This document shows, in pieces, positions 1 through 57,524 of a stretch of DNA of 64,000 bases. The stretch covers positions 62,001 through 126,000 of IMG/VR virus record IMGVR_UViG_3300032287_003113; one strand, given 5' to 3'. How positions within the stretch are numbered: position 1 is the first letter of the stretch; every line of letters begins with the position of its first letter. The notes beneath the pieces were generated by a model. That model was given only the letters and a program-made list of their open reading frames with translations, searched no databases and was not told where the DNA came from. Both the position numbers and the translations under genes were made by a program.

Positions 1-643
1 ATTGATCTTCGTCACTGTTTGGTGTGCTTGTGATAATACATTTACCACCAGTGGCCAAGGTAGGAGTAATGGAAGTCCAAAAGTCTGCGGCAATGGTGGG
101 GCGAACAAACGCAAACTCGTCGCAGTATAGGAGTGATATACTCATGCCTCGTCCGGTGTTTTCTGTTGTGGTTTGACTTACTATGCGGCTACCATTTTCA
201 AAGTCTAAGCTACCTTTGTTGTAACTGGTTACACCGGCTCGGATATAATCCGGACAGTTTTCATAAGCATAACGGACACGTTGCATGATCTCTTGAGCAC
301 CTAGGTACTTGTGAGCAGCTACCAAGATGGTTGTATCTGGCACAAACATGGCATACCATAGCAAGTAGCCAGCGGCCGTGGTCGATTTGCCCGTTTGTCT
401 TGGCATTAGGCTTATACTGAATCTATAATGATGATAAGACTCAATCAATCGTTCTTGGTATTCAAAAGGATGATATTGTATGGCACCGCGGGTAGGGTGT
501 TGTATAAAGAAATAGTTCTTCATAAAGTAATCTGGGCCTGTTACAGGATCAGCACAGCGGGCTAACTCTAAGATCTGTTGCTCAGTGTAAGACATCCGTT
601 TGTACGGTGCCTTGATAATTGCAGTCTCTAACTCTTTACTCAT
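1..643 (-). CDS. gp17: Terminase large subunit, N-terminal ATPase part (runs off window start)
   Basis: Manual translation from ATG at 643: MSKELETAIIKAPY...HPFEYQERLI...MPRQTGKSTT (Walker A)...GRGMSISLLYCDEFAF (Walker B)...IITSTPN; T4-type TerL motifs. Not in the ORF track. Confidence 0.95.
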   Translation of the reverse strand, partial: MSKELETAIIKAPYKRMSYTEQQILELARCADPVTGPDYFMKNYFFIQHPTRGAIQYHPFEYQERLIESYHHYRFSISLMPRQTGKSTTAAGYLLWYAMFVPDTTILVAAHKYLGAQEIMQRVRYAYENCPDYIRAGVTSYNKGSLDFENGSRIVSQTTTENTGRGMSISLLYCDEFAFVRPTIAADFWTSITPTLATGGKCIITSTPNSDEDQ

Positions 644-656
644 ATAAGTATATTTA

Positions 657-1184
657 ATGTCAGATACATTGTTACTCAATCAAAATTACCAACCAATTAG
701 TGTGCTACCCCTTAGTGTTATCAATTGGCAACACGCAATCAAACTCATGTACCTGGGTCGTGTTCATGTGTTGGAAACCTATCCCAATTGGATAGTACAC
801 TCAGAACGCCTGGCTCTAAATGTGCCCAGTGTTTGTGTGACCCGAGACTACTTTCACTACAAACAGGCTGTTAAATTCAGCAGATATAATCTTTACATGC
901 GAGACTTATTCAAGTGTCAATATTGTGATGATGTGTTTGACTACGAAGATCTGACCATTGATCATGTGAAACCTCGTAGCCTGGGTGGCAAAACAGTCTG
1001 GGAAAATTGTGTTACCAGTTGTAAAACTTGTAATCATGCCAAAGGCAGTCATTTGCTATTGCCCAAGGTAAAACCGTACAAACCAGATTATTATAGTCTA
1101 GTTGGACAATGGAAGAAAATGCCGTTTACAGTTAAACAAGATTCGTGGAATCAATACTTGGGGTTAGATAAGCGAGTAGCTTAA
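657..1184 (+). CDS. HNH endonuclease (McrA-like)
   Basis: RDLFKCQYC...LTIDHVKPRSLGGKTVWENCVTSCKTCNHAKG. Confidence 0.9.
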   Translation: MSDTLLLNQNYQPISVLPLSVINWQHAIKLMYLGRVHVLETYPNWIVHSERLALNVPSVCVTRDYFHYKQAVKFSRYNLYMRDLFKCQYCDDVFDYEDLTIDHVKPRSLGGKTVWENCVTSCKTCNHAKGSHLLLPKVKPYKPDYYSLVGQWKKMPFTVKQDSWNQYLGLDKRVA

Positions 1185-1196
1185 AGGAAAATAAAA

Positions 1197-1754
1197 ATGA
1201 AAATAGCCATTACCGGACATACCCTGGGAATTGGAAAAGCCTTGGCAGAAGTATATCAACAACACGGACATGCTGTAGTTGGGTTTAGTCGATCCACAGG
1301 TCACGACATTTCGACTATTGATGGTCGCACACGTATTATTACAGAATCAGCCGATTGTGATTTATTTTTCAACAATGCTCATGCCGACTTTTCACAATGT
1401 GATTTATTATTTGAGTTATGGATGTCTTGGAAAAATCAAAAAAAATATATTGTAAACATTTCATCTGCTCACAGCGTAAAATGGGTATATTTTTTAAAAG
1501 ATCAGGTCAGTGATATCAAGTATTGTAGCGTTAAAAAAGCACTAGAGGAATCTGCAGAATTTTTGTGGAACCAATTGGATTGGCCCGCAGTATCAATCGT
1601 TTCTCCGTGTCGTACAGATACTCCCAGAGTAGCACATAGAGATTGGAGTAACAAAGTTGATCCGACGGAATTTGCTAACCTGGTATATACCACGTTGATT
1701 CAGAATAATTTTAGAGTGCAGAGATTAAGCCTGGCCAACAGACCCATCGATTAG
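1197..1754 (+). CDS. Short-chain dehydrogenase/reductase-like NAD(P)-binding protein
   Basis: ITGHTLGIG Rossmann motif, FFNNA, IVNISS, YCSVK (YxxxK); SD AAGGA upstream. Confidence 0.8.
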   Translation: MKIAITGHTLGIGKALAEVYQQHGHAVVGFSRSTGHDISTIDGRTRIITESADCDLFFNNAHADFSQCDLLFELWMSWKNQKKYIVNISSAHSVKWVYFLKDQVSDIKYCSVKKALEESAEFLWNQLDWPAVSIVSPCRTDTPRVAHRDWSNKVDPTEFANLVYTTLIQNNFRVQRLSLANRPID

Positions 1755-2861: not shown

Positions 2862-2862
2862 A

Positions 2863-5207: not shown

Positions 5208-5209
5208 GT

Positions 5210-5794: not shown

Positions 5795-5811
5795 TATAAT
5801 CCTATATTCAG

Positions 5812-5819
5812 TATTTATA
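5812..5819 (-). promoter_or_regulatory. T4-type late promoter TATAAATA
   Basis: Perfect consensus, followed by AGGA SD and ATG 5794. Confidence 0.8.
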
Positions 5820-6297
5820 CTTTTTTGTTTAATATTTGTTTTAGCAATTCGTTGCGATCCAGCACAACTCCTTGCCCGTCTATGGCTGCTTCCACTGGAT
5901 CTTTGGCATCTTTTTTGATCTGGTGATCCAGCTTGGCTTTGGCCAACTGTAACTGTACCATTTTTAACTTTTTATCTAGCTTGGCAGTTTTGGCTGTGAT
6001 AGCGTGTCCCAACATTACACCAGCTGTTTGTAAGATAACACCCGAAAAGCGTGGCTCTACATTCATGCCCAGATCTATCAGATCTTCAGCTTTGCTCTGT
6101 GCCAACTGTGCCAATTCATCCAGCTCGGTATCACCGGTGTCTAAATTGTGTACTGTGGGTAGTGCAGCATCAATCTTATCTATAGCAAGATTAACTTCGG
6201 TGATTATGTCGCGGTTTTCTTCAATTATCTGCTCGGCTTCTTCGGCAGTAGCATCCGTGGATGGTAGGTTAAACAGCTCTTCTAATTTTTTAGTCAT
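5815..6297 (-). CDS. Helical hypothetical protein, possibly terminase small subunit-like
   Basis: 160 aa, coiled-coil character, ends ..RNELLKQIL; size and context only, no diagnostic motif. Confidence 0.4.
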   Translation of the reverse strand: MTKKLEELFNLPSTDATAEEAEQIIEENRDIITEVNLAIDKIDAALPTVHNLDTGDTELDELAQLAQSKAEDLIDLGMNVEPRFSGVILQTAGVMLGHAITAKTAKLDKKLKMVQLQLAKAKLDHQIKKDAKDPVEAAIDGQGVVLDRNELLKQILNKKV

Positions 6298-6305
6298 AGC
6301 AATAT

Positions 6306-6740
6306 TTATTTGCTACGGCCTTGGTGGAAAATCATATCTTCGGTGACAACTCTAAAGGTCATTCCGTGTGCTCGAGCCCAAGCACGAGCAGCCTCCCATT
6401 TGGCCATGTTCAATATGGCACTGGCTTGATCACGTATGTTTTTGGCGCCTTCTAGCGTGGTTTCTTTTTTGGGTTTGACTTCGACCAATTCAGCACGTTG
6501 GGCACCGCCAGCATCTTGATAGGTAATCAAAAAGTCTGGAACATAAATGGTATTTTTACCTGTCAACGGATTGCGATAGTTGATATGTACTGCCTCGCTA
6601 GCCCAGTTGATTATGCTGGGATTGTTGTCACAGAATTGCATAAAAACAAATTCCCAGCTGCTTCTATATGTAGGCGTTTTATTGCCCACATACTTGGCAG
6701 GGTTCTGTATTTGAAATTTGCCTTGCGAGTATTTGCTCAT
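6306..6740 (-). CDS. gp4: Head completion nuclease (PD-(D/E)xK, TnsA-like fold)
   Basis: YRSSWEFVFMQFCDNNPSIINWASE...YVPDF...EVKP...NMAKWEAA...FRVVTE. Confidence 0.9.
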   Translation of the reverse strand: MSKYSQGKFQIQNPAKYVGNKTPTYRSSWEFVFMQFCDNNPSIINWASEAVHINYRNPLTGKNTIYVPDFLITYQDAGGAQRAELVEVKPKKETTLEGAKNIRDQASAILNMAKWEAARAWARAHGMTFRVVTEDMIFHQGRSK

Positions 6741-7120
6741 ATCAATACTGTGCGAGAAACCAGGGGATTAGTATTGTTTGTTCGTTTGACGCCAATGGTA
6801 CTGGTAGGTGCTCGATTGGCGTTTAAGAATGCAGCAAGATAGTTGTTGAGTTCACCAGCTGGTAATTTTTGAAACTCGCTCAGCACCATCATTGGATCCA
6901 AGTTTTGTGCTTGTGCTGTGTACAACACCACCGCAGCTAAATTTTTAGCTGAAGTTTTGTTCTGTGTGCGTTTTTCAAAGAAAGCTACAATAGCATCATC
7001 AGCTGGCCCTGACGTAAATTCTTTAGAATAGAAATTATTAAAATATTTTCTAGCGTCATTGACAGCAACCGAAGTGTCTGGTGGTGCTAAATTAGTTGCG
7101 GTAGAGATTTGATTATTCAA
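6737..7120 (-). CDS. Hypothetical protein (tail/baseplate operon)
   Basis: 127-aa ORF overlapping both neighbours by 4 nt. Confidence 0.6.
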   Translation of the reverse strand: MNNQISTATNLAPPDTSVAVNDARKYFNNFYSKEFTSGPADDAIVAFFEKRTQNKTSAKNLAAVVLYTAQAQNLDPMMVLSEFQKLPAGELNNYLAAFLNANRAPTSTIGVKRTNNTNPLVSRTVLI

Positions 7121-8595
7121 AATAGACCCCCATAGGAAGCTTCACTTAATGCCGCTGTACTAAAACTGGCACTAAATTCGTTAGCAATGTCTCTTGTTAA
7201 ATCACCAAATGCCGTTGAAATATCGCCGACTAAACTTCCAACTTGGTCCTTGATAAATCCTGATGCTTGATCAATCAATGGTTGTGTTAGCTCAGTTACA
7301 TAGGAACCAACCTGTTGCATAGCATAGGTGGCTGCCATGTTGGTCACTGTGGCCAGGGCCGCTTGAGGGTTTTGTATAGCTGACGCAATTAGATTAATAG
7401 TGGCTCCGCCATTGGGCCCAAGACCTGCGGCTAGTCCACCAATCAGTCCATTGGCCGCGGAGCTTACTACGCCGCCCACGATATTAGACGCTTGTGCTTG
7501 TATCTGTTGCTGTATTTGTGCGGCACTGGTAATGCCCTGTGTTAAACTGCCAAGACTTGGCACACTGAATCCACCGGCATTGACTCCGCCCACACCTGCA
7601 GAAATTGATGTGCCAGTACCAAACAATCTTCCAAACACACTGGGTTGTGCTGATGTTGTACCGGCACCAAAATTTATGGGTGCGGTTGCATCGGTGTATA
7701 GTGGACTAATGCCTGCCAGGTCGGTGATTTGATCTGGCGCACGGTTATATCCACCTTGGCCATTGTCTACCAGGTCTGTTCCGTCTCTTGGAGCAATAGG
7801 ACTTGGCATCTTGTCATAGTGCAAATCAATAAATCCGCCGGCGTTGTTGGCAGTGGTATAGCCTGTTAGATATTTTACTGTTTCATACTGTATGGTCATT
7901 TCGTGACTTAACAAACTGGTTTCGCCATTCACATGATCACCGTGTTTGAACGCAGTGATAGTGGGATTGACCAATTGGTATTCACTAAAATTCTTTTGAT
8001 ACAAGCTGTAAATTCTTATAGCTTGTATGTATTGATAGGCCTGTTGCCCATTTAGGTTGGTACCAACTGTGGGACGTCTTGGACTATAACCCCAATCAAA
8101 GCTGGGACGACTGGCATACTTGTGTGGAGTATTATAGGTGGCGTCAGCATAGTCGGGGTCACGAAAAAAGAAACTGTAGTAGTCATACCAGAAATTTCTT
8201 ACATTGTCGCTTTGGTCATCGTGGAATGATATTTGCACAGGATCATACTTGATGCTATTTTGCACAATGTTTTTACGATTGTAAGCATTGTGTGTTTTGG
8301 TGTCGATAGTAAACTTTGGTAGCGTGGCACTTTTGACCAACATGCCTAATTCTCTTGCTGGAGCATTGCCACTACCCATGCTTTTGTATTGCAAGGTTTG
8401 ATCGGAGATATTTGTAATCAATGGATTAAAATCAAATTCCACATAAAACAAAAATCCATATTTGGGACTTAGTCGGAAATTGTCGTCGGTGAATATTCTT
8501 GCCGCATGGCGGTAGTCATACATTTGCCCGCGAGGATTTGTAACTGTATTTGGGTAATTAACTTGAGACGATGATAAATGTTTATTAATGCTCAT
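7117..8595 (-). CDS. Tail-tube-fold protein (gp19/gp54-like) with Gly/Ala-rich C-terminal extension
   Basis: LVKSATLPKFTIDT...YNRK...KYDPVQISFHDD parallels the adjacent tube protein (VVDIKRP...YNSK...INFRDD). Confidence 0.65.
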   Translation of the reverse strand: MSINKHLSSSQVNYPNTVTNPRGQMYDYRHAARIFTDDNFRLSPKYGFLFYVEFDFNPLITNISDQTLQYKSMGSGNAPARELGMLVKSATLPKFTIDTKTHNAYNRKNIVQNSIKYDPVQISFHDDQSDNVRNFWYDYYSFFFRDPDYADATYNTPHKYASRPSFDWGYSPRRPTVGTNLNGQQAYQYIQAIRIYSLYQKNFSEYQLVNPTITAFKHGDHVNGETSLLSHEMTIQYETVKYLTGYTTANNAGGFIDLHYDKMPSPIAPRDGTDLVDNGQGGYNRAPDQITDLAGISPLYTDATAPINFGAGTTSAQPSVFGRLFGTGTSISAGVGGVNAGGFSVPSLGSLTQGITSAAQIQQQIQAQASNIVGGVVSSAANGLIGGLAAGLGPNGGATINLIASAIQNPQAALATVTNMAATYAMQQVGSYVTELTQPLIDQASGFIKDQVGSLVGDISTAFGDLTRDIANEFSASFSTAALSEASYGGLF

Positions 8596-8612
8596 ACTAA
8601 TATTTATCCAAT

Positions 8613-8641
8613 AAAAAACCCGAGGTTTTTAAGCTCGGGTT
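8613..8641 (-). terminator. Intrinsic terminator after tail tube gene
   Basis: AACCCGAG-loop-CTCGGGTT followed by a U-tract on the minus strand. Confidence 0.8.
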
Positions 8642-8660
8642 AGTTGATAAAATTTATCAA

Positions 8661-9272
8661 TTAGTTAACGCTGTCACCTCTTGGGAAAGTAACAGTAGTA
8701 CCAACACCGCCACCGATTGTTTGTACAGCATTGTCAAAGCGGATGTTGACTGCAATTTGCACAGGATCATTACTGTTATAAGCCATGTCGCCATAGTCAA
8801 CTGAACTTAGGAAACAACCTTCTAGGTCCCACTGCTCAAGAATCACCGGAGTTGTTTGACCATTGCCACCGTCTAGGATGTCGAATTCCATACGGAACTT
8901 GTAATCAACACCACTTGGTGCAGAGCTTTGTTCCATAAAGTCAAACTGCTTCTGGATCTGTTCACCAATAAGTTTACTGACTTGACCAGTTGCATCATCA
9001 CGGAAGTTGATTGTGGTTTCTTGCCACTCTGGCTTGCCTTGCAAGTATACTTTGCTGTTATAAACATCAATAGTAACAGGTGCAAATGTTACGTTTGGAC
9101 GCTTGATATCCACTACTTGCTTGGTTAGTTCTGTGGTTGGGTTAGTTACACCAAGATTATAAAAGCTCGCACGGAAGCGATACTTTAACTTGGGCATCAA
9201 AAGACCTTGGCTTGATGCACTTTGGTCATTTGATAGTGGAACTGTAAATTTGCTTAAACTTGCTACGGCCAT
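8661..9272 (-). CDS. gp19: Tail tube protein
   Basis: PKLKYRFR...GKPEWQETTINFRDD...EQWDLEGCF...YGDMAY...IRFDNA; directly downstream of the sheath. Confidence 0.85.
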   Translation of the reverse strand: MAVASLSKFTVPLSNDQSASSQGLLMPKLKYRFRASFYNLGVTNPTTELTKQVVDIKRPNVTFAPVTIDVYNSKVYLQGKPEWQETTINFRDDATGQVSKLIGEQIQKQFDFMEQSSAPSGVDYKFRMEFDILDGGNGQTTPVILEQWDLEGCFLSSVDYGDMAYNSNDPVQIAVNIRFDNAVQTIGGGVGTTVTFPRGDSVN

Positions 9273-9290
9273 GTTATTCTCCTATACTCT

Positions 9291-9297
9291 TATTTAT
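9291..9297 (-). promoter_or_regulatory. Late promoter (ATAAATA) for tail tube
   Basis: GATAAATA...AGGAGA...ATG. Confidence 0.7.
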
Positions 9298-9305
9298 CTA
9301 TATTC

Positions 9306-12300: not shown

Positions 12301-12632
12301 TCGGCACGAATAGCATATAACTGATTGCCTAGGCCCAAGGCACTATAAGCTGTCATTAATCCGTATTCGTTTAGTTCGCCAGCGTGTATTGGTGTACCCG
12401 CAGAACTTAGTCGGAATGTGGGTGTGCCCATTGCTGTCACCAAGTCACGCTGACTGGTAAAGCTCTGCAATTTGCCTGCATTGGCTGCAGATGTACCCGA
12501 TGCTATTGCACCGTTATAAGTCTTATCTTGTGCTGTTGCTAATACCACTAGTGGTACTGATCCAACTGCGTTAGATACGTATTGACTCTGATCGTTAATG
12601 GAAATTTGAATTCCTGGGGAAACTAGTGCCAT
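9306..12632 (-). CDS. gp18: Tail sheath protein (enlarged, 1108 aa)
   Basis: MALVSPGIQI N-terminus; C-terminal YPWFAPAG..RG, INPI, WGQET, RVNVVRL, LFEPND, VVCDSSNN, IEPARDVEFIYI. Confidence 0.95.
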   Translation of the reverse strand: MALVSPGIQISINDQSQYVSNAVGSVPLVVLATAQDKTYNGAIASGTSAANAGKLQSFTSQRDLVTAMGTPTFRLSSAGTPIHAGELNEYGLMTAYSALGLGNQLYAIRADIDLDQLVGTSVRPSNTPADGTYWLDSVNTEWGIYSLNRTDVDFDHVTPLVITDSTQVENDNAFAYNVPKPKQSVGAIGTYAIVAVDTDGTNPNVLRLWKKTGTDSVATGTGGPGSNVWVQVGSTAWQLSTPAVTGTIAQPGVTIGQTLVLNGSTVIATGITSTTLASDINTAAITGVKAAAVGGKLVLFCTSAATSGRVTVASGTMNVSTILGITPGTYFAPYLFYGDYAETPSGGWFTTDSQPRPTGSIWWKLGSTGAGLNPIMKKYSSATGTFQALNVPAFLNTDNAVYGLDPIGGGVNIAEGQTIVTYSVNDTTSNGLRFYNHRARTAYEPNGESVAFTGTPTTFTAGNSFSIDYTTPGVEEVGAATTITLSGTTTASFVTDILSANIPYVTASVESNGTIKITHQTGGQLILLDVSGTPLTAAGFAADADGEATKGSGYIKNTVTGAFVISAFNNLTHESQLEITDSAPYAAPANGTYWYYSSAADVDIMINNNGWKGYQNVSSDSRGYNLGNTDPAGVIVTATEPLTQSDASALVAGDLWLDTSDLINYPKLYRYTGTAWAAINTSDQTTSNGIVFADARWDTDGTKDPIVDDLPAITSLLTSNYLDLDAPDYRLYPRGALLFNTRRSGYNVKQYRSNYYNDVSFPDVGANSIGLPTSLPAEAGAWVSSSGLNTDGSMKAGTAAQRAIVVAAMSSAIDSNLEVREDLYQFNLLVAPGYPELIDNLVTLNSDRGDTGFVIGDTPMTLAATSTAINNWNSNTDGNGLATASPYLAVYYPSGVTTDLTGNTVAVPASYSVLRTFLYSDNVSYPWFAPAGTHRGLVSNIQDVGYVDANTGAWTHNSIGQGLRDSLYTMNINPITQLPGVGIVVWGQETKSGTSTARNRVNVVRLENYLRTIFKSISNGYLFEPNDQVTRKSISTQIESALNDILSKRGIYDFLVVCDSSNNTSSTIANNQLYVDVAIEPARDVEFIYIPIALYNPGALASLGTSST

Positions 12633-12663
12633 GGTTATAATCCTTTATATATCATGTTAAAGT

Positions 12664-12740
12664 TATTTATTACGAAGTGGCATTTTTTGGGCACAATGGT
12701 GCCCTTATTTAAGGTTTGTTAATGCGTTTGCGGTTAAATA
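12664..12740. promoter_or_regulatory. Divergent late promoters (sheath leftward, HNH rightward) with a central hairpin
   Basis: ATAAATA on - at 12664-12670; TAAATA on + at 12735-12740; GGGCAC-AATG-GTGCCC at 12689-12704. Confidence 0.65.
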
Positions 12741-12744
12741 CAGT

Positions 12745-13092
12745 ATGACCAGACCGTTATGCCCGACTTGTAATGCCAGACCCGTAGCTATCAATTGCTA
12801 TCGTGGCGAACACACCTACTATCGTCGGCAATGCGACGCTTGTTTACGTATAGGGAAAAAATTAAAACCCAAACCGCCAGCTTGGGCCCAGAGTGGTTAT
12901 AAGAAAAAAGAACGTTGCGAACTATGCAACTTCAAAGCCAAACATATAAAACAGTTGTTTGTGTATCATGTGGATGGCAATTTAAAAAATACCAACACGT
13001 TCAATTTGAAAACTGTGTGTGCCAATTGCACCATTGAATTAGCCGTTAGTCAGATGCCGTGGCGGCAGGCTCCGCTAGTACCAGATTTTTAA
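12745..13092 (+). CDS. Zn-finger/HNH-like protein
   Basis: Four CxxC pairs; HVDGNLKNTNTFNLKTVCANC. Confidence 0.7.
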   Translation: MTRPLCPTCNARPVAINCYRGEHTYYRRQCDACLRIGKKLKPKPPAWAQSGYKKKERCELCNFKAKHIKQLFVYHVDGNLKNTNTFNLKTVCANCTIELAVSQMPWRQAPLVPDF

Positions 13093-15916: not shown

Positions 15917-16168
15917 TTAGTTTAATAGTGTGGCTAAAACAATATACTGTTCCAGTGTTGTCAATGTTTCTAATAATTTATCATTAAGTTCTTTGTATTG
16001 TACAGTATTTTTTCCTACTTTGCGACAGTTAATTTCTTCTTTACTTATTTCACGCTGTATATCATGGCAATTCTTCCAGATCTTTTTCAAATCTGTGCTT
16101 TGATGTCCGGGCAATTTAACTATAGTGAAAAAAGCCTGGTCCAAACGATACTTGATGTCCGGGTCCAT
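15917..16168 (-). CDS. Small hypothetical protein (probably leaderless, MDPDIKY...)
   Basis: Start moved to ATG 16168 because the longer ORF begins inside the -10 box. Confidence 0.6.
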   Translation of the reverse strand: MDPDIKYRLDQAFFTIVKLPGHQSTDLKKIWKNCHDIQREISKEEINCRKVGKNTVQYKELNDKLLETLTTLEQYIVLATLLN

Positions 16169-16174
16169 AACAAC

Positions 16175-16203
16175 ATTATACATTAAAAGGATTTATGGGT
16201 CAA
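16175..16203 (-). promoter_or_regulatory. Sigma70-type early promoter
   Basis: TTGACC-17 nt-TATAAT. Confidence 0.8.
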
Positions 16204-20097: not shown

Positions 20098-20099
20098 GA

Positions 20100-34020: not shown

Positions 34021-34164
34021 GGCTCCGGTCCTTAATTATGGGCATTATTACTATTTATCGCGGCCGTGAGAAAATGGTCCTTGCCAGGTTATTTTTGCGG
34101 AGGACTTGGGAAATTAAATTGTGTCGTTAGCGATCGTCTGCTAAGAAGTTGATATAGTATTTAT
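34021..34164 (-). promoter_or_regulatory. Tandem late promoters enclosing a structured ~100-nt leader
   Basis: ATAAATA at 34158-64 and 34052-58; TTAGC/GCTAA hairpin; GTCCT complementary to two AGGAC copies. Confidence 0.6.
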
Positions 34165-41764: not shown

Positions 41765-42452
41765 AGAATTCTAATAGAAGTTCAGCAATACGCCGGTGAC
41801 CCGCAATGTTGGGGTGAAACAGCTTGCCCGTAAAATATTCATTTTCTCTTATGTCAGGCAAATCATATTCTTTGCCAGTTAATGCTCGAGTAATAGTAGT
41901 TGGATAAATTAGATCTTTACGCAACATGTGTCCGTAGTTGTCAGTTACCAGTTGATCAAAGTAGCTGAAGAATACGCAATCTATTTCATTGTAAAAACAA
42001 AATTGTTGAAATTGAAAAACTGTTTGCACTCCTAAAAATTCATTGTACAGCCCTGACTCCACATACCGGTATGTTTGCTGTGCGTAGTCTTGCATGTGCA
42101 TTACGCAGTTGGGTGGTCTACCTGTAAAGTGTATGTTGCTGGTACTGTAAGGTGCCTCCGACGTTATGTTTATAAATTCGTTGTCTTGATTGTTATAACT
42201 CAAATACCTAGATGGTGCTGTGAGTCCAATCATAAAAATTAATTTGTAATTTTCAAAGTCTGGACGCTGTTTTATAAAATCAAATAGTTGTACTATGGTG
42301 TGTCCAATACTGCTAGCCGGTACGCCCATGTTTACATATTCTATACCAAGATGGTCGGCCACGTGTTTGACCCAGGGGTCTTCTCTAGGAATGTCTAGTT
42401 CGCTGCCAAATGTCCACGAGTCTCCAAAGGCCACCAATAACTGTTTCTTCAT
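41739..42452 (-). CDS. SGNH/GDSL-like hydrolase or acyltransferase
   Basis: Start corrected to MKKQLLVAFGDSWTFG (42452); NMGVPASS; FHPNIAGHRRIA. Confidence 0.7.
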   Translation of the reverse strand: MKKQLLVAFGDSWTFGSELDIPREDPWVKHVADHLGIEYVNMGVPASSIGHTIVQLFDFIKQRPDFENYKLIFMIGLTAPSRYLSYNNQDNEFINITSEAPYSTSNIHFTGRPPNCVMHMQDYAQQTYRYVESGLYNEFLGVQTVFQFQQFCFYNEIDCVFFSYFDQLVTDNYGHMLRKDLIYPTTITRALTGKEYDLPDIRENEYFTGKLFHPNIAGHRRIAELLLEFYDQKYPRD

Positions 42453-42484
42453 TATTATATTTACATGATAAAACCACAACCAAC

Positions 42485-42509
42485 AAAAAAGGCTCCGAAG
42501 AGCCTTTTT
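42485..42509 (-). terminator. Intrinsic terminator after MCP (cUUCGg loop)
   Basis: AAAAAGGCTC-TTCG-GAGCCTTTTTT on -. Confidence 0.9.
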
Positions 42510-46568: not shown

Positions 46569-46802
46569 TTACATTCCGAGAGGGGCGCCACCAGGTTCTG
46601 CAGGTGGTTGATATTGTTTTGCTACTGCTTCCAGCTTTTTTTCATGCTCAAGTTTGCGTACATCGTGGGCTTGTCTTAGCTGGTTTAGGTGTGATAGAGT
46701 CAAGCGAGTTTTGCGGCTATCCGACATCGTAAGCGTACTTTGGTCTGCTTTTTCGTCGTGATAACCATGAGGTGCTGGGTCAAATAGTTCACTAATAATC
46801 AT
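46569..46802 (-). CDS. Small hypothetical head-cluster protein
   Basis: MIISELFD...DSRKTRLTL..LN.LR; TAAATA 5 nt upstream of ATG. Confidence 0.65.
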   Translation of the reverse strand: MIISELFDPAPHGYHDEKADQSTLTMSDSRKTRLTLSHLNQLRQAHDVRKLEHEKKLEAVAKQYQPPAEPGGAPLGM

Positions 46803-46825
46803 AATACTATTTAACCTTTTATTTG

Positions 46826-51018: not shown

Positions 51019-51031
51019 GGAAAAATAAACC

Positions 51032-52098: not shown

Positions 52099-52099
52099 C

Positions 52100-52567: not shown

Positions 52568-52996
52568 CTAAATCTTGTTGATAATATGTGAGCCATGTAC
52601 ACGGACCTGTATGTGTCCGTTATAATAATCTTCGGTTTCTAAAACTCTGCGAGCAAATTGTTCTCTCGCCTCGATGTAACTACATTCAGATTTACTTTTG
52701 CAGTAGTATAGTATTTCTCTACTGAAATTGTCAACACCCAATGCAACCACATCTTTTGTTAATTCTGGACTGGAACCATAGTATGTTTGCCAGTCTGAAT
52801 CAATTTTACCACGAATCTTCTTGCGTTTCTTTTTACCATTTTTTAGTTTGACCATTCGGTAAGTGGTCTTGCTAAATTTTGCAAGTTTTTTGCCAATATA
52901 CTTCCGGCCGGTTAGGTTATTTGTGATCAAATAAACAAAACCAACACAATCTTCGGGTAGCGTTTCTACTTGAGTATTTTCGTAAATCCATGACAT
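52568..52996 (-). CDS. GIY-YIG endonuclease, T4 EndoII (DenA)-like
   Basis: GFVYLITN..TGRKYIGKK...SDWQTYYGSS...F.REIL...E...YYNG. Confidence 0.8.
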   Translation of the reverse strand: MSWIYENTQVETLPEDCVGFVYLITNNLTGRKYIGKKLAKFSKTTYRMVKLKNGKKKRKKIRGKIDSDWQTYYGSSPELTKDVVALGVDNFSREILYYCKSKSECSYIEAREQFARRVLETEDYYNGHIQVRVHGSHIINKI

Positions 52997-53042
52997 GCAT
53001 AGTAGTTATGATCTTTGCCCTGCAACATATACTGGTCTTGAA

Positions 53043-54812
53043 TTAAACAATGTCTACGTCAGTGTTGTAGCTGGTGTACCCGTTTTCTTTGACCACGTGA
53101 AGCGTGTTGTTTACCCGCCCTGCCAATTCATCCTTGTGCGACACCAACCAAATACTCTTGTTAGCTTCGCGACTCATCTTTTTCAGGATAGCCAGACTGT
53201 TTTCTACGCCTGAGCTATCCATACCGCTGTCTACTAACTCGTCGATAAACAACAAGTTAATGGGTTGATATAGGCTTTCCCAAACATCGCGGAAGCTCCA
53301 GCTCAAGGATAAAATCAAGCGATTGCGTTCTCCGCGACTTAGATTGTCAAAGTCCAAATCTCTACCTAACTCTGTAATGGCTACAGTCAAATCATTGTTG
53401 AACTTGACTGTGTGTGGTAAGCCAATACGGTCCAGGTATTGTCCCAAGCGGGCATTTAAATAACTTAAATTCTGATCAATAATACGTTTACGAATAAATG
53501 AATCTTTGTTGGTCAGCAGTTTGAGCAGGAACTCTTGATGTTCTCTAATGTTATTGAGTTCGTTGATCACATCAAAACTGACTTCTTCTACGCCTTGTGT
53601 TTGCATTTCTGCTATTTGCTCAGCATACGGATCTTGTTCAACTGCCTTGATTTCCAACTGTTGAATCAAGTTATCAACGCTTGCTTGATGATGAATAGCA
53701 TCCGACTCTTTGTCATAAAACGTTTCGGGCCGTGGTCCTAGCTTGCCCAGCCCATCGTGAGCTGACTGTAATTCACCCAGAGTGGCAGCAAAGGCATCCG
53801 CTGCTTCCTTTGCTCCAGCCAAGTCTCTCTGCTTTTGTCCCAGTACTGATTGGTGCTTCTCGTCATGGAAATCCTGTCCACAGGTATGGCACGTATGATT
53901 TTCCAACGAAACAAGTTCTGCTGATATCTTGCCAATCGTTTTTTCCTCACGGGAAAGGTCCAGTTTTGTGCGACCAATCGCCGACGATAGTTCATTGATA
54001 TCCTTGCGAGTTTGATCCCATGTCTTGAACGCTTGGTGTGCCTGAATCTCGGCCTGGATGTCAATTCTCTGAAGCTCTTCAATTCCTGTCTGTAATTTCT
54101 GTATATCTTCTGCATGTTTATTCACCCATAGCGTTTGCCTACGCTTCAACGCTTCGATCTGTTCTTCAATACGCCGGTTGGCATCGCCCACAGCCTTGAT
54201 ACGAAACTCTTCTTGTGTGATGGCATCTTTGGTTGCTTTGCCAGCCTCCTTTAGTTTGTCTGCTTTTTCACTTAGCAATGTAATACCAAGTAATTGCTCA
54301 ATTATAGTACGCTGGTCATTGGCTTTGAGTGCCAAGAATGGTTCTGTGTAGGTGTTGAGAGCCACAATGTGCTTGAACATGTCGTGACTCATGCCCAGCA
54401 TACGTTCTATTTCTTGCTGTGTTTCTCGGCTGTCGCCTTGTGCATCATCTGTGATTTCTTGTTCGCTATCGCCAACAAAGAATTTCATAGTGTTAGGTTT
54501 ACGTCCACGTTCTATCCTGTAGCTGACACCTTCTTTTTCAAAATCAATTGTGACCATCATGTTTTTGGCATTGGTCTTGTTGATCAAGTTATCTTTTTTA
54601 ATGTTAGTAAGTGCGTTGCCGTACAAGGCATAGCTCAATGCATTGATAATAGTGGTTTTACCTGTACCGTTACGTGCACCGGAGTCGTCTCCGCCTAGGT
54701 CTAAATTTTCACCCAACACCAGAGTCAAGTCTTGTCGATCAAAATTAACTGCCTGTGTGGTATTGCCCACACTCATAAAGTTTTTAACAGTAAGGTCTTT
54801 TATTTTAAACAT
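53043..54812 (-). CDS. gp46: Recombination ATPase (Rad50/SbcC-like)
   Basis: KNFMSVGN, NGTGKTT, CHTC zinc hook, LSRGE signature, LLFIDELVDSGMD, VSH. Confidence 0.95.
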   Translation of the reverse strand: MFKIKDLTVKNFMSVGNTTQAVNFDRQDLTLVLGENLDLGGDDSGARNGTGKTTIINALSYALYGNALTNIKKDNLINKTNAKNMMVTIDFEKEGVSYRIERGRKPNTMKFFVGDSEQEITDDAQGDSRETQQEIERMLGMSHDMFKHIVALNTYTEPFLALKANDQRTIIEQLLGITLLSEKADKLKEAGKATKDAITQEEFRIKAVGDANRRIEEQIEALKRRQTLWVNKHAEDIQKLQTGIEELQRIDIQAEIQAHQAFKTWDQTRKDINELSSAIGRTKLDLSREEKTIGKISAELVSLENHTCHTCGQDFHDEKHQSVLGQKQRDLAGAKEAADAFAATLGELQSAHDGLGKLGPRPETFYDKESDAIHHQASVDNLIQQLEIKAVEQDPYAEQIAEMQTQGVEEVSFDVINELNNIREHQEFLLKLLTNKDSFIRKRIIDQNLSYLNARLGQYLDRIGLPHTVKFNNDLTVAITELGRDLDFDNLSRGERNRLILSLSWSFRDVWESLYQPINLLFIDELVDSGMDSSGVENSLAILKKMSREANKSIWLVSHKDELAGRVNNTLHVVKENGYTSYNTDVDIV

Positions 54813-54821
54813 AGGTTCTTA

Positions 54822-56111
54822 TTATATACTAAAATCTTGATCTAGCCAAGCAAAATGAGCTCGCCAATTGGTATTGCGTCTTTGGTCCAGGGTTGTCAGA
54901 TATGTTTTTAATTTATCGATTTGACTGACATTATTTTTAGATGCTAAACTTGTGGTAGCAATACCTTGCATGGCCTTACGCTGTGCTTGCTGTGTGGGAG
55001 TAGTATCGGGCATCAACTTCAATATCTGGTCAAAGTCGTTGGCAAACACAGCACCATCGAACAAATATGGATTATCAAATTCTCCGGACGTATTAAAACT
55101 GTGAATGATGGGTTCTGCTGCCCATTCCCGTTGGAACCATGTGGCTGTGGCTGTTTGTTTGGTATTCCAGTGATTGATACGTTCCAATAACTTGGGCAAC
55201 GATTTAATAGTCAAGGCTGATACAGCACTATTAATGCTTAAGGATATCCATGGCTGATTCAACAGCAATTCAAAGTTACGTTGCCATTGTGCTAGGTCGA
55301 GCCCATAGCGAACATATTCCTGCTCACTGTCCCAACAATCTAAACTGGCAGTGATTTGCAGTTTCCATATTTTGTTTGACAGCACCAATTTTCTAAATTG
55401 CTGTAAGTATCGTTCAAATCGTGGTGTGGGTATGTTTAGATTGGTTACTACACTAAAAATTAAATCGGGATTGGCATGAGTTTGCCAAAACTCAATGCTG
55501 TCGTCTAGTTCGGTCATTAAAAACGGCTCACCACCTAAAATATGATACCGTTTGATTGCTTTGTAACGATCGTTTTCGTTCAAGTATTGCCATAGACCTG
55601 CAACCATTTGATCATAGTGGTCATTGTGTTGTGCTTGTTTGATGTCAAACGTTCGAGTGTGAAATGAATCTCCAAACTTTCTATTTTCTTCTTCCCACAG
55701 GCTGCTATGATGCGGCCCACAGTATACGCATTTCATATTACAGGTATTTTTAAAATAAACTTCCAGTATGGTAGGAGTAACAGTTGTGGATGATTCATCT
55801 GTGTCAAGCTCGGGCGGCACCAACCACCCGTTATCTTGCTGTAGCGTACTTTGTCTATCACTTAAGCCACCTGCATCTTCTACGTTTTTGCAATATTCAC
55901 AACCAGCCCTGGGCCACGCACCTGCAAGCATGGTGTTTCTAGCTGAAATTTTTTCAGGCAAATTATGAAATGATGCAAAGTTGTCGGCTGGTATGGCATA
56001 TTTTTCTGTGCGGTGACAACTGGCACTAGTACCACTGTTAAAGTAGACGGTGCTCCATGCCCATTTTAATAAACAAGCAGATTCTGTGCGTATGGGAAAC
56101 ACTTTATTCAT
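54822..56111 (-). CDS. Radical SAM protein with extra N-terminal Cys cluster
   Basis: CNMKCVYC (CxxxCxxC), LGGEPF, TN; N-terminal C..KW...SCH...CEYC. Confidence 0.85.
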   Translation of the reverse strand: MNKVFPIRTESACLLKWAWSTVYFNSGTSASCHRTEKYAIPADNFASFHNLPEKISARNTMLAGAWPRAGCEYCKNVEDAGGLSDRQSTLQQDNGWLVPPELDTDESSTTVTPTILEVYFKNTCNMKCVYCGPHHSSLWEEENRKFGDSFHTRTFDIKQAQHNDHYDQMVAGLWQYLNENDRYKAIKRYHILGGEPFLMTELDDSIEFWQTHANPDLIFSVVTNLNIPTPRFERYLQQFRKLVLSNKIWKLQITASLDCWDSEQEYVRYGLDLAQWQRNFELLLNQPWISLSINSAVSALTIKSLPKLLERINHWNTKQTATATWFQREWAAEPIIHSFNTSGEFDNPYLFDGAVFANDFDQILKLMPDTTPTQQAQRKAMQGIATTSLASKNNVSQIDKLKTYLTTLDQRRNTNWRAHFAWLDQDFSI

Positions 56112-56472
56112 ATAATATATGATTCATGGGCAACTCTTCTTGTGGATTGTATCGTTTGCGTACATATTCTAATTCTTCTGGCAACGACTTGATATCAGTT
56201 ATCACAACGATAAAAAAATGTGGAATGTCGTGATGTTGCACATATTCCTGCAACGAGATCAAGATATCGTGCGGTTGATCGGCATAGGATTTTTTCAATG
56301 GCTGGTTAGCAACAAAGACCACACGCTCATTGTCAGCAAACACTTCCTTGTGCAATCGTCGCAAGGCAGTATATAGTTTACCCTTTGGCAAGTTATCAAA
56401 CTCAGTTAAGTCAATGAAATTGTCAATTTGATACTGAGTTTGCAGTCGATGTTTAATCCGTGCCAGGATCAT
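56104..56472 (-). CDS. Hypothetical protein
   Basis: 122 aa, overlaps gp47 and the radical SAM gene. Confidence 0.6.
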   Translation of the reverse strand: MILARIKHRLQTQYQIDNFIDLTEFDNLPKGKLYTALRRLHKEVFADNERVVFVANQPLKKSYADQPHDILISLQEYVQHHDIPHFFIVVITDIKSLPEELEYVRKRYNPQEELPMNHILYE

Positions 56473-57488
56473 AAGTTTCTATAAATGTCCAACAGGAGAT
56501 TTTTATTAAACTGTTCACTGTCAATGTTGCTCAACTGTCCGTACACAATCTGATCCACTGACTCAAATGCTATATTACCTTGTATTTCATATTCAGTCAA
56601 GTCTGTGACTTTGGCAGGGATCAGTGTAATCTCACGCAGTTTATACGTGTCAATAAAAGTTTCTTTGATAAAAGTGGCTTCTTCGTAGCTGATGTCAATA
56701 TCCAAGTTAACCCTAACATGCATGTTGGGTTTGAGCATGACTTCGGTGTGTTTGAGCACATCGCTCAGTTGAAACACACGATATATGGGCTGATCGGGCC
56801 AAGCATGATACACTGGCTCTTTGTCCCACTCTAGAATCATCATGCCACGATCATCGTCGCCGGCATCGGCATAGTTGTGCGGAAAGCAGTTGCCCAAATA
56901 GGTAATGTTGCCTTTGGTCTGTCGTTTGTGGAAGTGCCCAGAGAACACATGTTCAAAACCTTTTAAATCATTTTTAGGATCAACTTCACCATGATCCGGC
57001 ATGGCTACCATGGCATTCATCAAGTATCCGGGCAATTCAAAATGCCCAAACATGTACTTGCCTCGTAGTTTCTTTAGACGTTTGAAGTCATCGCCCACTA
57101 GCCACGGAGCAATAGTAACGTCGCCATGAGTAGTCCAGTCGTTACAGATATGTATTCTATTAAGGTGCTTTGCCCATTCCACACTCTGTACATCTCGCTT
57201 GTCGCGATAATACAGATCATGATTTCCAGGAATAAAGAAAGTTTGTTCGAAGTTTTCATTCAAGTGCTCCAGGGCACGTAGACTATAGCCCAAGGTTAGG
57301 ATATTGATTGACGCACGATTGTTGTGCCAGTCTCCAAGAAACATGCAAGTTTCGCATCCTTCTTCCCGTGCCTTGGCAGTGGCCCATTTAACAAAGTTCA
57401 AACAGTCCTCGTTGTGTAAGGTACTGTTTGATTTTAACCCAAAGTGTATGTCTGTAAAGACGGCGGCTCGTTTGAATAGATTAGTCAT
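56469..57488 (-). CDS. gp47: Recombination nuclease (Mre11/SbcD-like)
   Basis: TDIHFG, LGDW, PGNHD, GHFE, SGHFH metallophosphoesterase motifs. Confidence 0.95.
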   Translation of the reverse strand: MTNLFKRAAVFTDIHFGLKSNSTLHNEDCLNFVKWATAKAREEGCETCMFLGDWHNNRASINILTLGYSLRALEHLNENFEQTFFIPGNHDLYYRDKRDVQSVEWAKHLNRIHICNDWTTHGDVTIAPWLVGDDFKRLKKLRGKYMFGHFELPGYLMNAMVAMPDHGEVDPKNDLKGFEHVFSGHFHKRQTKGNITYLGNCFPHNYADAGDDDRGMMILEWDKEPVYHAWPDQPIYRVFQLSDVLKHTEVMLKPNMHVRVNLDIDISYEEATFIKETFIDTYKLREITLIPAKVTDLTEYEIQGNIAFESVDQIVYGQLSNIDSEQFNKNLLLDIYRNL

Positions 57489-57495
57489 AACATAC

Positions 57496-57524
57496 AGTAT
57501 AGACTAATATTTGGAAAAGATCAA
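57496..57524 (-). promoter_or_regulatory. Sigma70-type promoter for gp47
   Basis: TTGATC-17 nt-TATACT, 7 nt before ATG. Confidence 0.7.

What the first reader, a model, noticed from the sequence alone, without database searches (positions are those of the whole stretch)
641..57524. Widespread leaderless gene architecture with both late and sigma70-type promoters
Seen: a late box (TAAATA or a one-base variant) lies 4-7 nt before an ATG with no SD at terL (gap 7), HNH 657 (TAAGTA, 6), 6297 (5), 8595 (5), 12745 (4), 42452 (5), 46802 (5) and 52996 (TAACTA, 6). A sigma70 -10 box lies 6-8 nt before the ATG at 16168, 57488 and 54812. Known: T4 late transcripts start about 6 nt after TATAAATA, which would put +1 at or next to the ATG. 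Abundant structural genes (tube, sheath, neck) instead have 18-35-nt leaders with an SD. Inference: two translation tiers, with low-copy proteins leaderless. This also hints at a host that tolerates leaderless mRNA.
Basis: partly seen in the sequence, partly recalled or inferred. Interest (0 to 1): 0.65.

Follow-up and report, generated by a model that had tools for sequence, protein, structure and literature searches.

The report
Promoter-fused (leaderless) phage genes
In this freshwater T4-related giant phage and hundreds of its relatives, a fixed subset of genes has a promoter box placed so close to the ATG that the mRNA should begin at the start codon with no ribosome-binding leader; this looks like a conserved second, low-output expression tier, but no transcript 5' end has been mapped.

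Summary
All quoted sites exist. In the 220-kb record, TAAATA lies exactly 5 nt before an ORF-opening ATG 7 times, against about 0.3 per neighbouring spacing (P≈3e-8). In the 357-kb complete genome of the same phage the counts are 12 at gap 5, 4 at gap 4 and 5 at gap 6-7 (P≈8e-14). A separate hump at 14-34 nt holds the SD-led genes.

The spacing is gene-specific and conserved in relatives down to 34-60 % protein identity. Gap 5 occurs in 46/53, 28/35, 16/16, 32/46 and 44/72 distinct upstream regions for five genes. Sheath, tube and neck genes keep 16-33-nt leaders with AGGAG. When a lineage lengthens the gap, the box stays and an SD usually appears.

The window encodes a gp55-type late sigma factor. 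T4 geometry (box at -13..-6) puts +1 on the A of the ATG at gap 5. SbcD and an early gene carry a -35/-10 pair with the -10 mostly 6 nt from the ATG, the equivalent sigma70 geometry.

Transcript 5' ends could not be mapped because only contigs were available. The host is unknown, so the host-tolerance idea is untested. Verdict: a real feature and a new variant of known kinds.

The parts
641..656 (-). terL start: late box TAAATA (656..651), 7-nt spacer, ATG (643..641). This predicts a 0-2-nt leader.
   Evidence: In relatives the box is kept but the gap varies: 5-7 nt in 6 distinct regions and 12-33 nt, SD-less and A-rich, in 6.
645..659 (+). HNH endonuclease start: variant box TAAGTA (645-650), 6-nt spacer, ATG 657. 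It shares the 13-bp spacer with the divergent terL start.
   Evidence: (phrog_16726, 1e-30). TAAGTA+5+ATG recurs upstream of orthologues of 42452.
6295..6308 (-). TAAATA + 5 nt + ATG of the 160-aa gene 5815-6297 (phrog_16202). The upstream gene's TAA stop lies inside the box.
   Evidence: Orthologues: gap 5 in 28 and gap 4 in 7 of 35 distinct regions. Divergence is third-position-dominated from codon 2.
8593..8650 (-). Terminator hairpin + U-run (about 8641..8613), then TAAATA (8606..8601), 5 nt, and the ATG (8595) of the 492-aa tail-tube paralogue 7117-8595.
   Evidence: hairpin -13.8 kcal/mol, z=-3.2. Gap 5 in 46/53 distinct orthologous regions at 48-99 % identity. One lineage has gap 19 plus GGA.
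12735..12747 (+). TAAATA + 4 nt + ATG of the conserved 115-aa ORF 12745-13092, divergent from the sheath gene.
   Evidence: Orthologues: gap 5 in 18 and gap 4 in 15 of 35. Codon-position differences are 5/10/45.
42450..42509 (-). Terminator (42509..42486), then TAAATA (42463..42458), 5 nt, and ATG 42452 of the 237-aa gene downstream of the major capsid gene. The longer ORF from 42521 runs through the terminator and is unlikely to be the real start.
   Evidence: All four homologous loci have a terminator followed by TAAATA (gap 4) or TAAGTA (gap 5) and ATG.
46800..46813 (-). TAAATA + 5 nt + ATG of the 77-aa gene 46569-46802 (phrog_13986), which follows the portal gene (the position of T4 gp67).
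   Evidence: Of 46 distinct orthologous regions at 34-73 % identity, 32 have gap 5 and 42 fall in gaps 3-8. Four have gaps 15-19, three of them with GGAG.
52994..53008 (-). Variant box TAACTA + 6 nt + ATG of the 142-aa gene 52568-52996 (phrog_447 / homing-endonuclease-like).
   Evidence: ATAACTA/ATAATTA at gap 6 is kept in close relatives. In distant ones the same box lies about 30 nt upstream. The promoter class is uncertain.
16166..16203 (-). Sigma70-type promoter TTGACC-N17-TATAAT, 6 nt, then the ATG of the 83-aa early gene 15917-16168.
   Evidence: 11/12 match. Relatives at 25-50 % identity keep TTGAC-N17-TATAAT with 5-8 nt (mostly 6) to the ATG.
57486..57524 (-). TTGATC-N17-TATACT, 7 nt, then the ATG of SbcD (gp47-like) 56469-57488.
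   Evidence: In 67 distinct orthologous upstream regions a -10-like hexamer lies at gap 6 in 37, gap 7 in 10, gap 5 in 5 and gap 8 in 5. Most have a -35-like TTG. Only 5/67 have an SD-like 4-mer. Motif I (DIH) at residues 13-15 fixes the start.
54810..54849 (-). TTGGCT-N17-TATAAT, 8 nt, then the ATG of SbcC (gp46-like) 53043-54812.
   Evidence: 10/12. In many relatives SbcC is directly coupled to SbcD. Where an insert separates them, many relatives have a TATAAT-like hexamer 5-8 nt before the ATG.
57537..58480 (-). gp55-type late sigma factor gene (GTG 58427, AGGA SD), with its own sigma70-type promoter TTGACC-N17-TAGTAT (58480..58452). This is the factor expected to read the TAAATA boxes.
   Evidence: phrog_12791 1e-80; phrog_234 2e-23; phmmer versus T4 gp55, 1.6e-8.
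9270..9296 (-). Leadered control: TAAATA (9296..9291), 18-nt leader with AGGAG, then the ATG of tail tube gene 8661-9272.
   Evidence: Orthologues have gaps 18-21, all with an SD (46 distinct regions).
12630..12669 (-). Leadered control: ATAAATA, 31-nt leader with AGGA, then the ATG of tail sheath gene 9306-12632.
   Evidence: Orthologues have gaps 25-33, 32/33 with an SD.

Best explanation
The phage is a freshwater member of the T4 superfamily. Its capsid protein and TerL are closest to Vibrio phage 2.275.O, Sinorhizobium phage Phosso and Pseudomonas phage PA5oct. It runs a T4-style programme: sigma70-type TTGAC-N17-TATAAT promoters for early and middle genes, and a -35-less (A/C/T)TAAATA box read by its own gp55-type sigma for late genes.

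For a defined subset of genes the promoter is fused to the start codon. That subset is 21-22 of about 400 genes in the full genome, roughly a third of the gene starts that carry a late box. The late box ends 5 nt (range 4-7) before the ATG, and the sigma70 -10 hexamer ends 6 nt (range 5-8) before it. With canonical geometry (T4 box at -13..-6, sigma70 hexamer at -12..-7), RNA polymerase would start at the A of the ATG or within 1-2 nt of it. The mRNA would then have no room for a Shine-Dalgarno sequence and would be translated through its 5'-terminal AUG, presumably by the 70S/IF2 leaderless pathway.

Abundant virion proteins keep 16-33-nt leaders with AGGAG. Low-copy or enzymatic proteins use the fused form, which gives two output tiers from one promoter type.

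Shown: the motif, its spacing statistics, gene-specific conservation, absence of an SD, coding from that ATG, the gp55 homologue, and terminators or divergent layouts that leave no other promoter. Inferred: the exact transcript 5' end, the translation mechanism and the lower output.
For: (1) Spacing spike. In G000, gap 5 has 7 cases against 0.3 per flanking gap (P=3e-8). In the complete genome G001, gaps 4/5/6/7 have 4/12/1/4 cases against 0.44 (P=8e-14), and the histogram is bimodal with a second hump at 14-34 nt.

(2) Conservation. Gap 5 occurs in 46/53, 28/35, 16/16, 32/46, 44/72 and 18/35 (plus 15 at gap 4) distinct orthologous upstream regions, at protein identities down to 34-60 %. This holds even where the N-terminal residues differ.

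(3) Controls. Tube, sheath, neck and w5794 orthologues keep gaps of 14-33 nt with an SD. Translationally coupled genes have no box.

(4) Toggle. When the gap is long (15-19 nt) in a lineage, the box persists and GGA/GGAG usually appears (L073/74, L231, L269, L272). PA5oct has CTAAATA after terL with a 24-nt leader.

(5) Geometry. The T4 box spans -13..-6 (PMC2988020). A second, unrelated promoter type shows the matching spacing: the SbcD -10 hexamer is at gap 6 in 37/67 regions, and the early gene 16168 mostly has gap 6.

(6) The gp55 homologue lies in the window.

(7) Isolation. Terminators lie directly upstream of 8595 and 42452, and 12745 and terL are divergently placed, so no other promoter fits.

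(8) Starts are genuine. Divergence is third-position-dominated from codon 2, there is no downstream SD-led start, and SbcD motif I is at residues 13-15.

(9) Leadered late boxes are A-enriched at the 5th-7th nt after the box, where the ATG's A sits in the fused genes.

(10) RNA contigs cover the leadered tube and sheath genes but not the fused gene 7117-8595 (weak).
Against: No transcript 5' end was observed. The only RNA data are assembled contigs, which cannot show starts.

gp33 and gp45 homologues were not found by sequence in either the 220-kb or the 357-kb record, so full T4-type activation is unproven.

In leadered promoters the strongest A-enrichment is at the 5th, not the 6th, nt after the box, so gap-5 genes may carry a 1-nt leader.

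At four window-region sites (6297, 46802, and the virion protein and gp25-like genes just outside the window) the upstream gene stops inside or just before the box, so termination-reinitiation could also serve them.

The first 40 nt of the fused genes are not less structured than those of leadered late genes.

The terL gap is not conserved.
Confidence: 0.7

Rival explanations
1. The box next to the ATG is not used as a promoter there. The genes are translated from read-through polycistronic late transcripts. The conserved TAA-ATA-N5-ATG arrangement would be an SD-independent termination-reinitiation or A/U-rich (S1-type) initiation signal.
For: At 6297, 46802, the virion-protein gene after terL and the gp25-like gene, the upstream ORF's stop lies inside or just before the box, 8-12 nt from the ATG. 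The genome has many SD-less coupled genes (120 'other' starts). RNA contigs bridge the sheath/tube junction, so read-through exists.
Against: Sites 8595 and 42452 follow strong terminators with no ORF upstream. Site 12745 and terL are divergently oriented. The box persists when a leader with an SD is present, so it is not tied to the ribosome site. The same fused geometry is seen with full -35/-10 sigma70 promoters, which have no translational rationale. No RNA contig continues from the tube gene into 7117-8595.
Confidence: 0.15
2. The box is a late promoter, but initiation is offset (for example 8-10 nt after the box). Transcripts would then start inside the annotated ORF, and the real start codon would lie downstream.
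For: TSS spacing in this phage is unmeasured. PHROG alignments for some proteins begin at residues 3-33.
Against: No in-frame SD-led start exists within 45 codons. Codon-position bias shows coding from codon 2. SbcD motif I lies at residues 13-15. An exact 5-nt spacing to an unused ATG would have no reason to be conserved.
Confidence: 0.04
3. Chance co-occurrence in AT-rich intergenic DNA, or a start-calling artefact.
For: The raw pattern count in the window is only 8 against 4.0 expected. Weak sigma70-like matches are no more frequent than in shuffles.
Against: Poisson P=3e-8 and 8e-14 for ORF-linked gap 5. Permuted hexamers show no spike. The arrangement is conserved in hundreds of independent contigs.
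Confidence: 0.01

Closest known systems
Bacteriophage T4 late promoters (TATAAATA read by gp55, with gp33 and the gp45 clamp)
   Same: A -35-less A/T box of the same core sequence lies upstream of virion genes. A gp55-family sigma is encoded (phrog_234/12791). The segment after the box is AT-rich. Late units run in either orientation.
   Different: The conserved core here is 6-7 nt ((A/C/T)TAAATA), with tolerated TAAGTA/TAACTA variants. About a third of box-linked gene starts have the box fused 4-7 nt from the ATG. T4 has no annotated gene at a perfect TATAAATA-N5-ATG site. gp33 and gp45 were not identified.
Classical leaderless mRNAs (lambda cI from PRM, P2 gene V, Tn1721 tetR) and leaderless-rich genomes (Actinobacteria, Deinococcus, archaea; GeneMarkS-2 'leaderless' classes, PMC6028130)
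   Same: The -10 element lies about 6-7 nt before an ATG, there is no SD, and the start codon is ATG.
   Different: Here most fused promoters are phage-sigma (gp55-type) late promoters in a lytic T4-superfamily phage that otherwise uses strong SDs. The choice is gene-specific and conserved across a large clade rather than being a genome-wide default.
Pseudomonas phage PA5oct and Vibrio phage 2.275.O (nearest cultured relatives; MCP 67-70 %, TerL 45-54 % identity)
   Same: Shared head, tail and packaging genes. PA5oct has CTAAATA immediately after terL, as here. PA5oct early promoters are TTGAC/TATAATA (PMC7318152).
   Different: In PA5oct the gene after terL has a 24-nt leader, and TAAATA-N5-ATG shows no visible enrichment. 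Leaderless transcripts were not reported for PA5oct in the text searched.
Jumbo phages with mapped TSSs (phiKZ, AR9)
   Same: Large phages with their own promoter classes.
   Different: phiKZ dRNA-seq found no leaderless transcript (PMC8244752). AR9 5' UTRs are 26-491 nt (PMC5312081). Those phages use their own RNA polymerases, not gp55.

Membership tests
T4-type (gp55-dependent) late transcription | Phage-encoded gp55-family sigma factor | tested here: met
   Window 57537-58427(-): phrog_12791 1e-80 and phrog_234 2e-23; phmmer versus T4 gp55 1.6e-8.
T4-type (gp55-dependent) late transcription | TATAAATA-like -10 box without a conserved -35, upstream of virion genes | tested here: met
   34 leadered boxes give the consensus A-TAAATA with no upstream conservation. 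Boxes precede the sheath, tube, neck and portal genes.
T4-type (gp55-dependent) late transcription | gp33 co-activator and gp45 sliding clamp | tested here: inconclusive
   There is no hit with phrog_223 or with T4 gp45/gp33 by phmmer in G000 or the complete G001. The PHROG search had no positive control. gp44 and gp43 homologues are present in G001.
T4-type (gp55-dependent) late transcription | Transcription starts about 6 nt after the box | not testable with these tools
   Only assembled contigs of RNA runs were available. The indirect hint is A-enrichment at the 5th-7th nt after leadered boxes.
Leaderless mRNA | Primary 5' end at, or within a few nt of, the start codon | not testable with these tools
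   No raw reads were available. Contig ends cannot show starts.
Leaderless mRNA | Promoter -10 element 5-8 nt upstream of the start codon | tested here: met
   Late box at 4-7 nt. Sigma70 -10 hexamer at 5-8 nt.
Leaderless mRNA | No Shine-Dalgarno sequence; ATG start codon | tested here: met
   No correctly spaced SD is possible in a 4-7-nt gap, and only 5/67 SbcD upstream regions have an SD-like 4-mer. The start codon is ATG in at least 96 % of distinct orthologues.
Leaderless mRNA | The ATG is the true start of the protein | tested here: met
   Third-position-dominated divergence from codon 2, no downstream SD-led start, and SbcD motif I at residues 13-15.
Translational coupling / termination-reinitiation | An upstream ORF ends within a few nt of the start codon | tested here: not met
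   This is met at 6297, 46802 and two genes just outside the window. It is not met at 8595 and 42452 (terminators), at 12745 and terL (divergent), or at 16168 and 57488 (full promoters). It therefore cannot be the general explanation.

The most novel reading that the evidence does not exclude
A cosmopolitan, abundant clade of freshwater T4-superfamily jumbo phages has hard-wired a two-tier late expression system. Roughly a third of its gp55-type late promoters are fused to the start codon, so that phage-sigma RNA polymerase makes 5'-AUG mRNAs. The choice is gene-specific, stable over more than 50 % protein divergence, and evolutionarily interchangeable with 'box + leader + SD'. This would be the first systematic use of leaderless mRNAs by a T4-type late transcription system. 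It may imply that translation late in infection, through a host or phage factor, favours 5'-terminal AUGs.
Probability: 0.5. Interest if true: 0.7.

Novelty: new variant of a known kind. Interest (0 to 1): 0.6.

Why it matters
If transcript mapping confirms it, this gives a natural, replicated set of matched promoter/leader variants of the same genes (fused versus leadered plus SD) across hundreds of genomes. That set could show how phages set protein stoichiometry at the level of mRNA architecture.

It would extend leaderless translation to gp55-type late transcription in phages that otherwise rely on strong SDs.

It also matters for annotation. Gene callers that demand an SD mis-place these starts: a longest-ORF call here ran 42452 back through a terminator to 42521. 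A 'late box + 5 nt + ATG' rule fixes about 20 starts per genome in a very common group of environmental phages.

Tried and rejected
(1) TSS mapping from public runs. Three freshwater metatranscriptomes hold the region, but only as Logan contigs. They show no starts, only that contigs lie on 8727-12630 and none on 7000-8600.

(2) A nucleotide search of cultured phages found nothing. Protein searches gave only distant relatives.

(3) gp45 and gp33 were not found: phrog_223 on G000 and G001, T4 queries by phmmer, and PHROG scans of 10 ORFs around the gp44 homologue. This is inconclusive rather than evidence of absence.

(4) A phage-borne ribosomal protein S21, as a possible translation modifier, is absent from G000. 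Other factors were not searched.

(5) 5'-end RNA structure. The first 40 nt of the fused genes (-2.8 kcal/mol) are not less structured than those of leadered late genes (-2.05). They are marginally less structured than those of all other genes together (one-sided P=0.05), so this is uninformative.

(6) Host prediction. Relatives of the capsid gene occur in MAGs labelled Fischerella, Polynucleobacter, Haliscomenobacter, Legionellales, Thiotrichaceae and others. This is mis-binning noise, so no host is called.

(7) T4 and PA5oct were checked for the same arrangement. T4 has one perfect gap-5 site, which is not at an annotated gene. PA5oct shows no visible enrichment.

(8) Literature searches found no report of leaderless late genes in T4-type phages. 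The library lacks most subscription journals, so this is not proof of novelty.

(9) The costly protein searches, structure prediction and complex prediction were not needed and were not used. No alternative genetic code was invoked.


Full report
WHAT THE SEQUENCE IS. The window is bases 62,001-126,000 of a 219,879-bp viral contig that is common in freshwater metagenomes (9 studies). CheckV rates it about 51 % complete. A 356,865-bp record (G001), rated 100 % complete and 95-98 % identical, is the same phage in full. TerL and the major capsid protein are closest to Pseudomonas phage PA5oct, Vibrio phage 2.275.O, Sinorhizobium phage Phosso and Agrobacterium phage Atu_ph07, at 45-70 % amino-acid identity. 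These are T4-superfamily jumbo phages. The window carries the tail sheath, tail tube, neck adaptor, portal, prohead protease, capsid, baseplate proteins, SbcC/SbcD (gp46/47-like) and a gp55-type late sigma factor.

CHECK OF THE OBSERVATION. The bare pattern TAAATA-N4-7-ATG is only mildly over-represented in the window (8 versus 4.0±1.9 in shuffles). The decisive point is where the matches fall.

Counting only ATGs that open an ORF of at least 60 codons, the distance from TAAATA to the ATG in the 220-kb record has a single-nucleotide spike at 5 nt: 7 cases, plus 1 at 4 nt and 2 at 7 nt. Neighbouring distances have about 0.3 each (Poisson P=3e-8). A separate broad hump lies at 17-31 nt. None of the other 14 permutations of the letters of TAAATA exceeds 3 at gap 5. 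In the complete genome the counts at gaps 4/5/6/7 are 4/12/1/4 against a background of 0.44 (P=8e-14). With a crude gene call, 22 of about 400 genes are of this fused type and 39 have a late box followed by a leader with an SD.

COMPARATIVE TEST. Six scans of IMG/VR returned 24-80 loci each from relatives. After collapsing identical upstream regions, the distance from box to ATG is as follows:
- Tail-tube paralogue 7117-8595: gap 5 in 46 of 53 regions (48-99 % protein identity), gap 6 in 4, gap 4 in 1, and gap 19 with a GGA in one lineage.
- 160-aa gene 5815-6297: gap 5 in 28 and gap 4 in 7 of 35.
- Virion-protein gene after terL: gap 5 in 16 of 16.
- 77-aa gene 46569-46802: gap 5 in 32 of 46 (34-73 % identity). 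Four have gaps of 15-19 nt, three of them with GGAG.
- gp25-like wedge gene just past the window end: gap 5 in 44 of 72, with 69 in gaps 3-8.
- ORF 12745-13092: gap 5 in 18 and gap 4 in 15 of 35.

The N-terminal residues of the tube paralogue differ between lineages (MSINK, MAQYK, MATPQ and others), yet the terminator, T-run, box and 5-nt spacing are kept. Controls behave differently. Orthologues of tube, sheath, neck, w5794 and the 1058-aa baseplate gene have the box 13-37 nt upstream. The first four nearly always carry an SD-like 4-mer; the baseplate gene does so in only 17 of 64 regions. Translationally coupled genes (6740, 7120) have no box.

Two further points argue that the box is a promoter rather than a ribosome signal. 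It persists when it is far from the ATG, and an SD usually appears when that happens (L073/74, L231, L269, L272). In PA5oct the same CTAAATA sits right after terL but with a 24-nt leader.

WHY THIS MEANS A START AT THE ATG. The T4 late box TATAAATA occupies -13 to -6; the review speaks of 'A(-13) in place of T' and of a box about one helical turn upstream of the start (PMC2988020). Five nucleotides after the box therefore put +1 on the A of the ATG. The factor that reads such boxes, gp55, has a clear homologue in the window at 57537-58427 (phrog_12791 1e-80; phrog_234, the T4 gp55 family, 2e-23; phmmer versus T4 gp55 1.6e-8). That gene itself is expressed from a sigma70-type promoter through a leader with AGGA and a GTG start.

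Independent support comes from the second promoter class. The 83-aa early gene at 16168 has TTGACC-N17-TATAAT followed by 6 nt and the ATG. Relatives at only 25-50 % identity keep TTGAC-N17-TATAAT with mostly 6 nt to the ATG. For SbcD, 67 distinct orthologous upstream regions have a -10-like hexamer at gap 6 in 37, gap 7 in 10, gap 5 in 5 and gap 8 in 5. Most have a TTG-type -35 at 16-18 bp, and only 5 have an SD-like 4-mer. The few lineages without the close -10 have a leader with GGA. A sigma70 hexamer occupies -12..-7 (established knowledge), so gap 6 again puts +1 on the A. Two unrelated promoter types each show the spacing that their own geometry requires for a 5'-AUG transcript. A translational signal would not explain that coincidence.

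LOCAL CONTEXT. The ATG at 8595 is preceded by a hairpin plus U-run (-13.8 kcal/mol, z=-3.2) that ends 6 nt before the box. The ATG at 42452 is preceded by a 10-bp terminator at 42509..42486. Site 12745 is divergent from the sheath gene. terL (643, minus strand) and the HNH gene (657, plus strand) are divergent with only 13 bp between their ATGs. In these cases no other promoter can fit.

The starts are real. Differences among orthologues in codons 2-15 are dominated by third positions (for example 122/41/232, 138/111/435 and 5/10/45). No SD-led in-frame start lies within 45 codons. The SbcD phosphoesterase motif I (D-I-H) is at residues 13-15.

Leadered late boxes show A-enrichment at the 5th-7th nucleotide after the box (21/34 A at the 5th), where the ATG's A sits in the fused genes. 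This fits initiation there, but it leaves open whether gap-5 transcripts carry 0 or 1 extra nucleotide.

WHAT IS NOT SHOWN. No transcript 5' end was seen. The three RNA runs that hold the phage are kept only as assembled contigs. They lie on 8727-12630 (tube and sheath) and not on 7000-8600, whereas a DNA run covers everything. This is compatible with an efficient terminator and a weaker or less stable fused transcript, but a hole in contigs proves nothing.

gp33 and gp45 were not identified in either record, although gp44 and gp43 homologues are present in G001.

Termination-reinitiation may contribute at the four sites where the upstream gene's TAA lies in or next to the box.

The terL spacing is not conserved: 5-7 nt in some relatives and 12-33 nt, SD-less and A-rich, in others. 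The TAACTA box at 52996 is conserved, but its promoter class is unclear. For SbcC the close -10 appears only where an insertion separates it from SbcD.

The 'two tiers' idea fits the annotation: abundant virion proteins are leadered, and low-copy or enzymatic ones are fused. It rests on no expression measurement.

The host-tolerance idea could not be examined. MAGs containing relatives carry labels from unrelated phyla, which is typical of mis-binned phage contigs. No S21 gene was found. The strong AGGAG SDs and TTGACA/TATAAT promoters argue only for a host with conventional sigma70 and SD usage (inference).

COMPARISON WITH WHAT IS KNOWN. Leaderless mRNAs are well known (lambda cI, actinobacteria, archaea; PMC6028130), and so are T4 late promoters. 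I found no report of leaderless late genes in T4-type phages. T4 has no annotated gene at a perfect TATAAATA-N5-ATG site. PA5oct shows no visible enrichment. phiKZ dRNA-seq found no leaderless transcripts (PMC8244752), and AR9 5' UTRs are 26-491 nt (PMC5312081). I therefore rate this a new variant of known kinds. It is real, widespread in an abundant environmental clade, and directly testable by 5'-end mapping.

CONFIDENCE. The sequence feature and its conservation: near certain. That most of these genes are expressed from transcripts with 0-2-nt leaders: about 0.7.

Noticed in passing
window 641-659: The divergent terL (minus) and HNH (plus) start codons are only 13 bp apart. That 13-bp spacer reads TAAATA on one strand and (A)TAAGTA on the other, so it is a possible back-to-back pair of fused promoters whose open complexes would overlap.
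   Followed up: partly
window 657-1754: The HNH gene and a 185-aa ORF form a two-gene island on the opposite strand, next to terL. The terL upstream region differs among relatives, and several lack the HNH start motif 'ctgacat'. This is consistent with a mobile homing-endonuclease insertion.
   Followed up: partly
window 54822-56472: A radical-SAM-like 429-aa gene and a 122-aa gene sit between SbcD and SbcC. Many relatives have SbcC directly coupled to SbcD. Where an insert separates the two genes, many relatives have a TATAAT-like box 5-8 nt before the SbcC ATG.
   Followed up: partly
L025, L030, L058, L087 (orthologues of window 5815-6297): In four relatives the conserved N-terminus (TKK...) is preceded by GGAGA-N6-ATT instead of box+ATG. 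A copy of the box+ATGACTAAAAAA lies about 50 nt upstream in L025. This could be an ATT start, an N-terminal extension or a small insertion.
   Followed up: no
window 34020-34057: Upstream of the 680-aa gene 31978-34020, the late box is followed at 6 nt by an out-of-frame ATG. That ATG opens a 15-codon mini-ORF overlapping the SD-led main start, a possible leaderless uORF or a chance ATG.
   Followed up: partly
genome 10806-10842, window 16169-16203, genome 184380-184440: A family of near-identical early promoters (TTGACC-c/aATAAATCC-tTTTAAT-g/a-TATAAT) occurs in the genome. Two copies are fused to an ATG at 6 nt: a gamma-glutamyl-cyclotransferase-like gene and the 83-aa gene. One copy has a 30-nt leader with AGGAG.
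   Followed up: partly
G001 census: The base after the ATG is A in 16 of 22 fused genes, against 14 of 39 leadered late genes. Leadered structural genes mostly begin ATG-GCx/CCA.
   Followed up: no
genome 129739-142311 (L005:5739-18311): A single 4,190-codon ORF follows the baseplate genes. It is probably a giant tail-fibre or virion protein.
   Followed up: no
L002:18364-18439 and L002:9266-9355: ARAGORN reports a tRNA with a two-base anticodon call ('ac', type unknown) and a tRNA-Ser with anticodon ACT, among 11 tRNA genes.
   Followed up: no
window 19414-20789: Two adjacent paralogous genes (227 and 229 aa) have nearly identical upstream sequences, which suggests a tandem duplication.
   Followed up: no
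G000 versus G001: The window's 220-kb record lacks a block of about 137 kb that the 357-kb record has (G001 roughly 20-160 kb, holding gp43, gp44 and more fused-promoter genes). The record is therefore an incomplete assembly of a genome of about 357 kb.
   Followed up: partly
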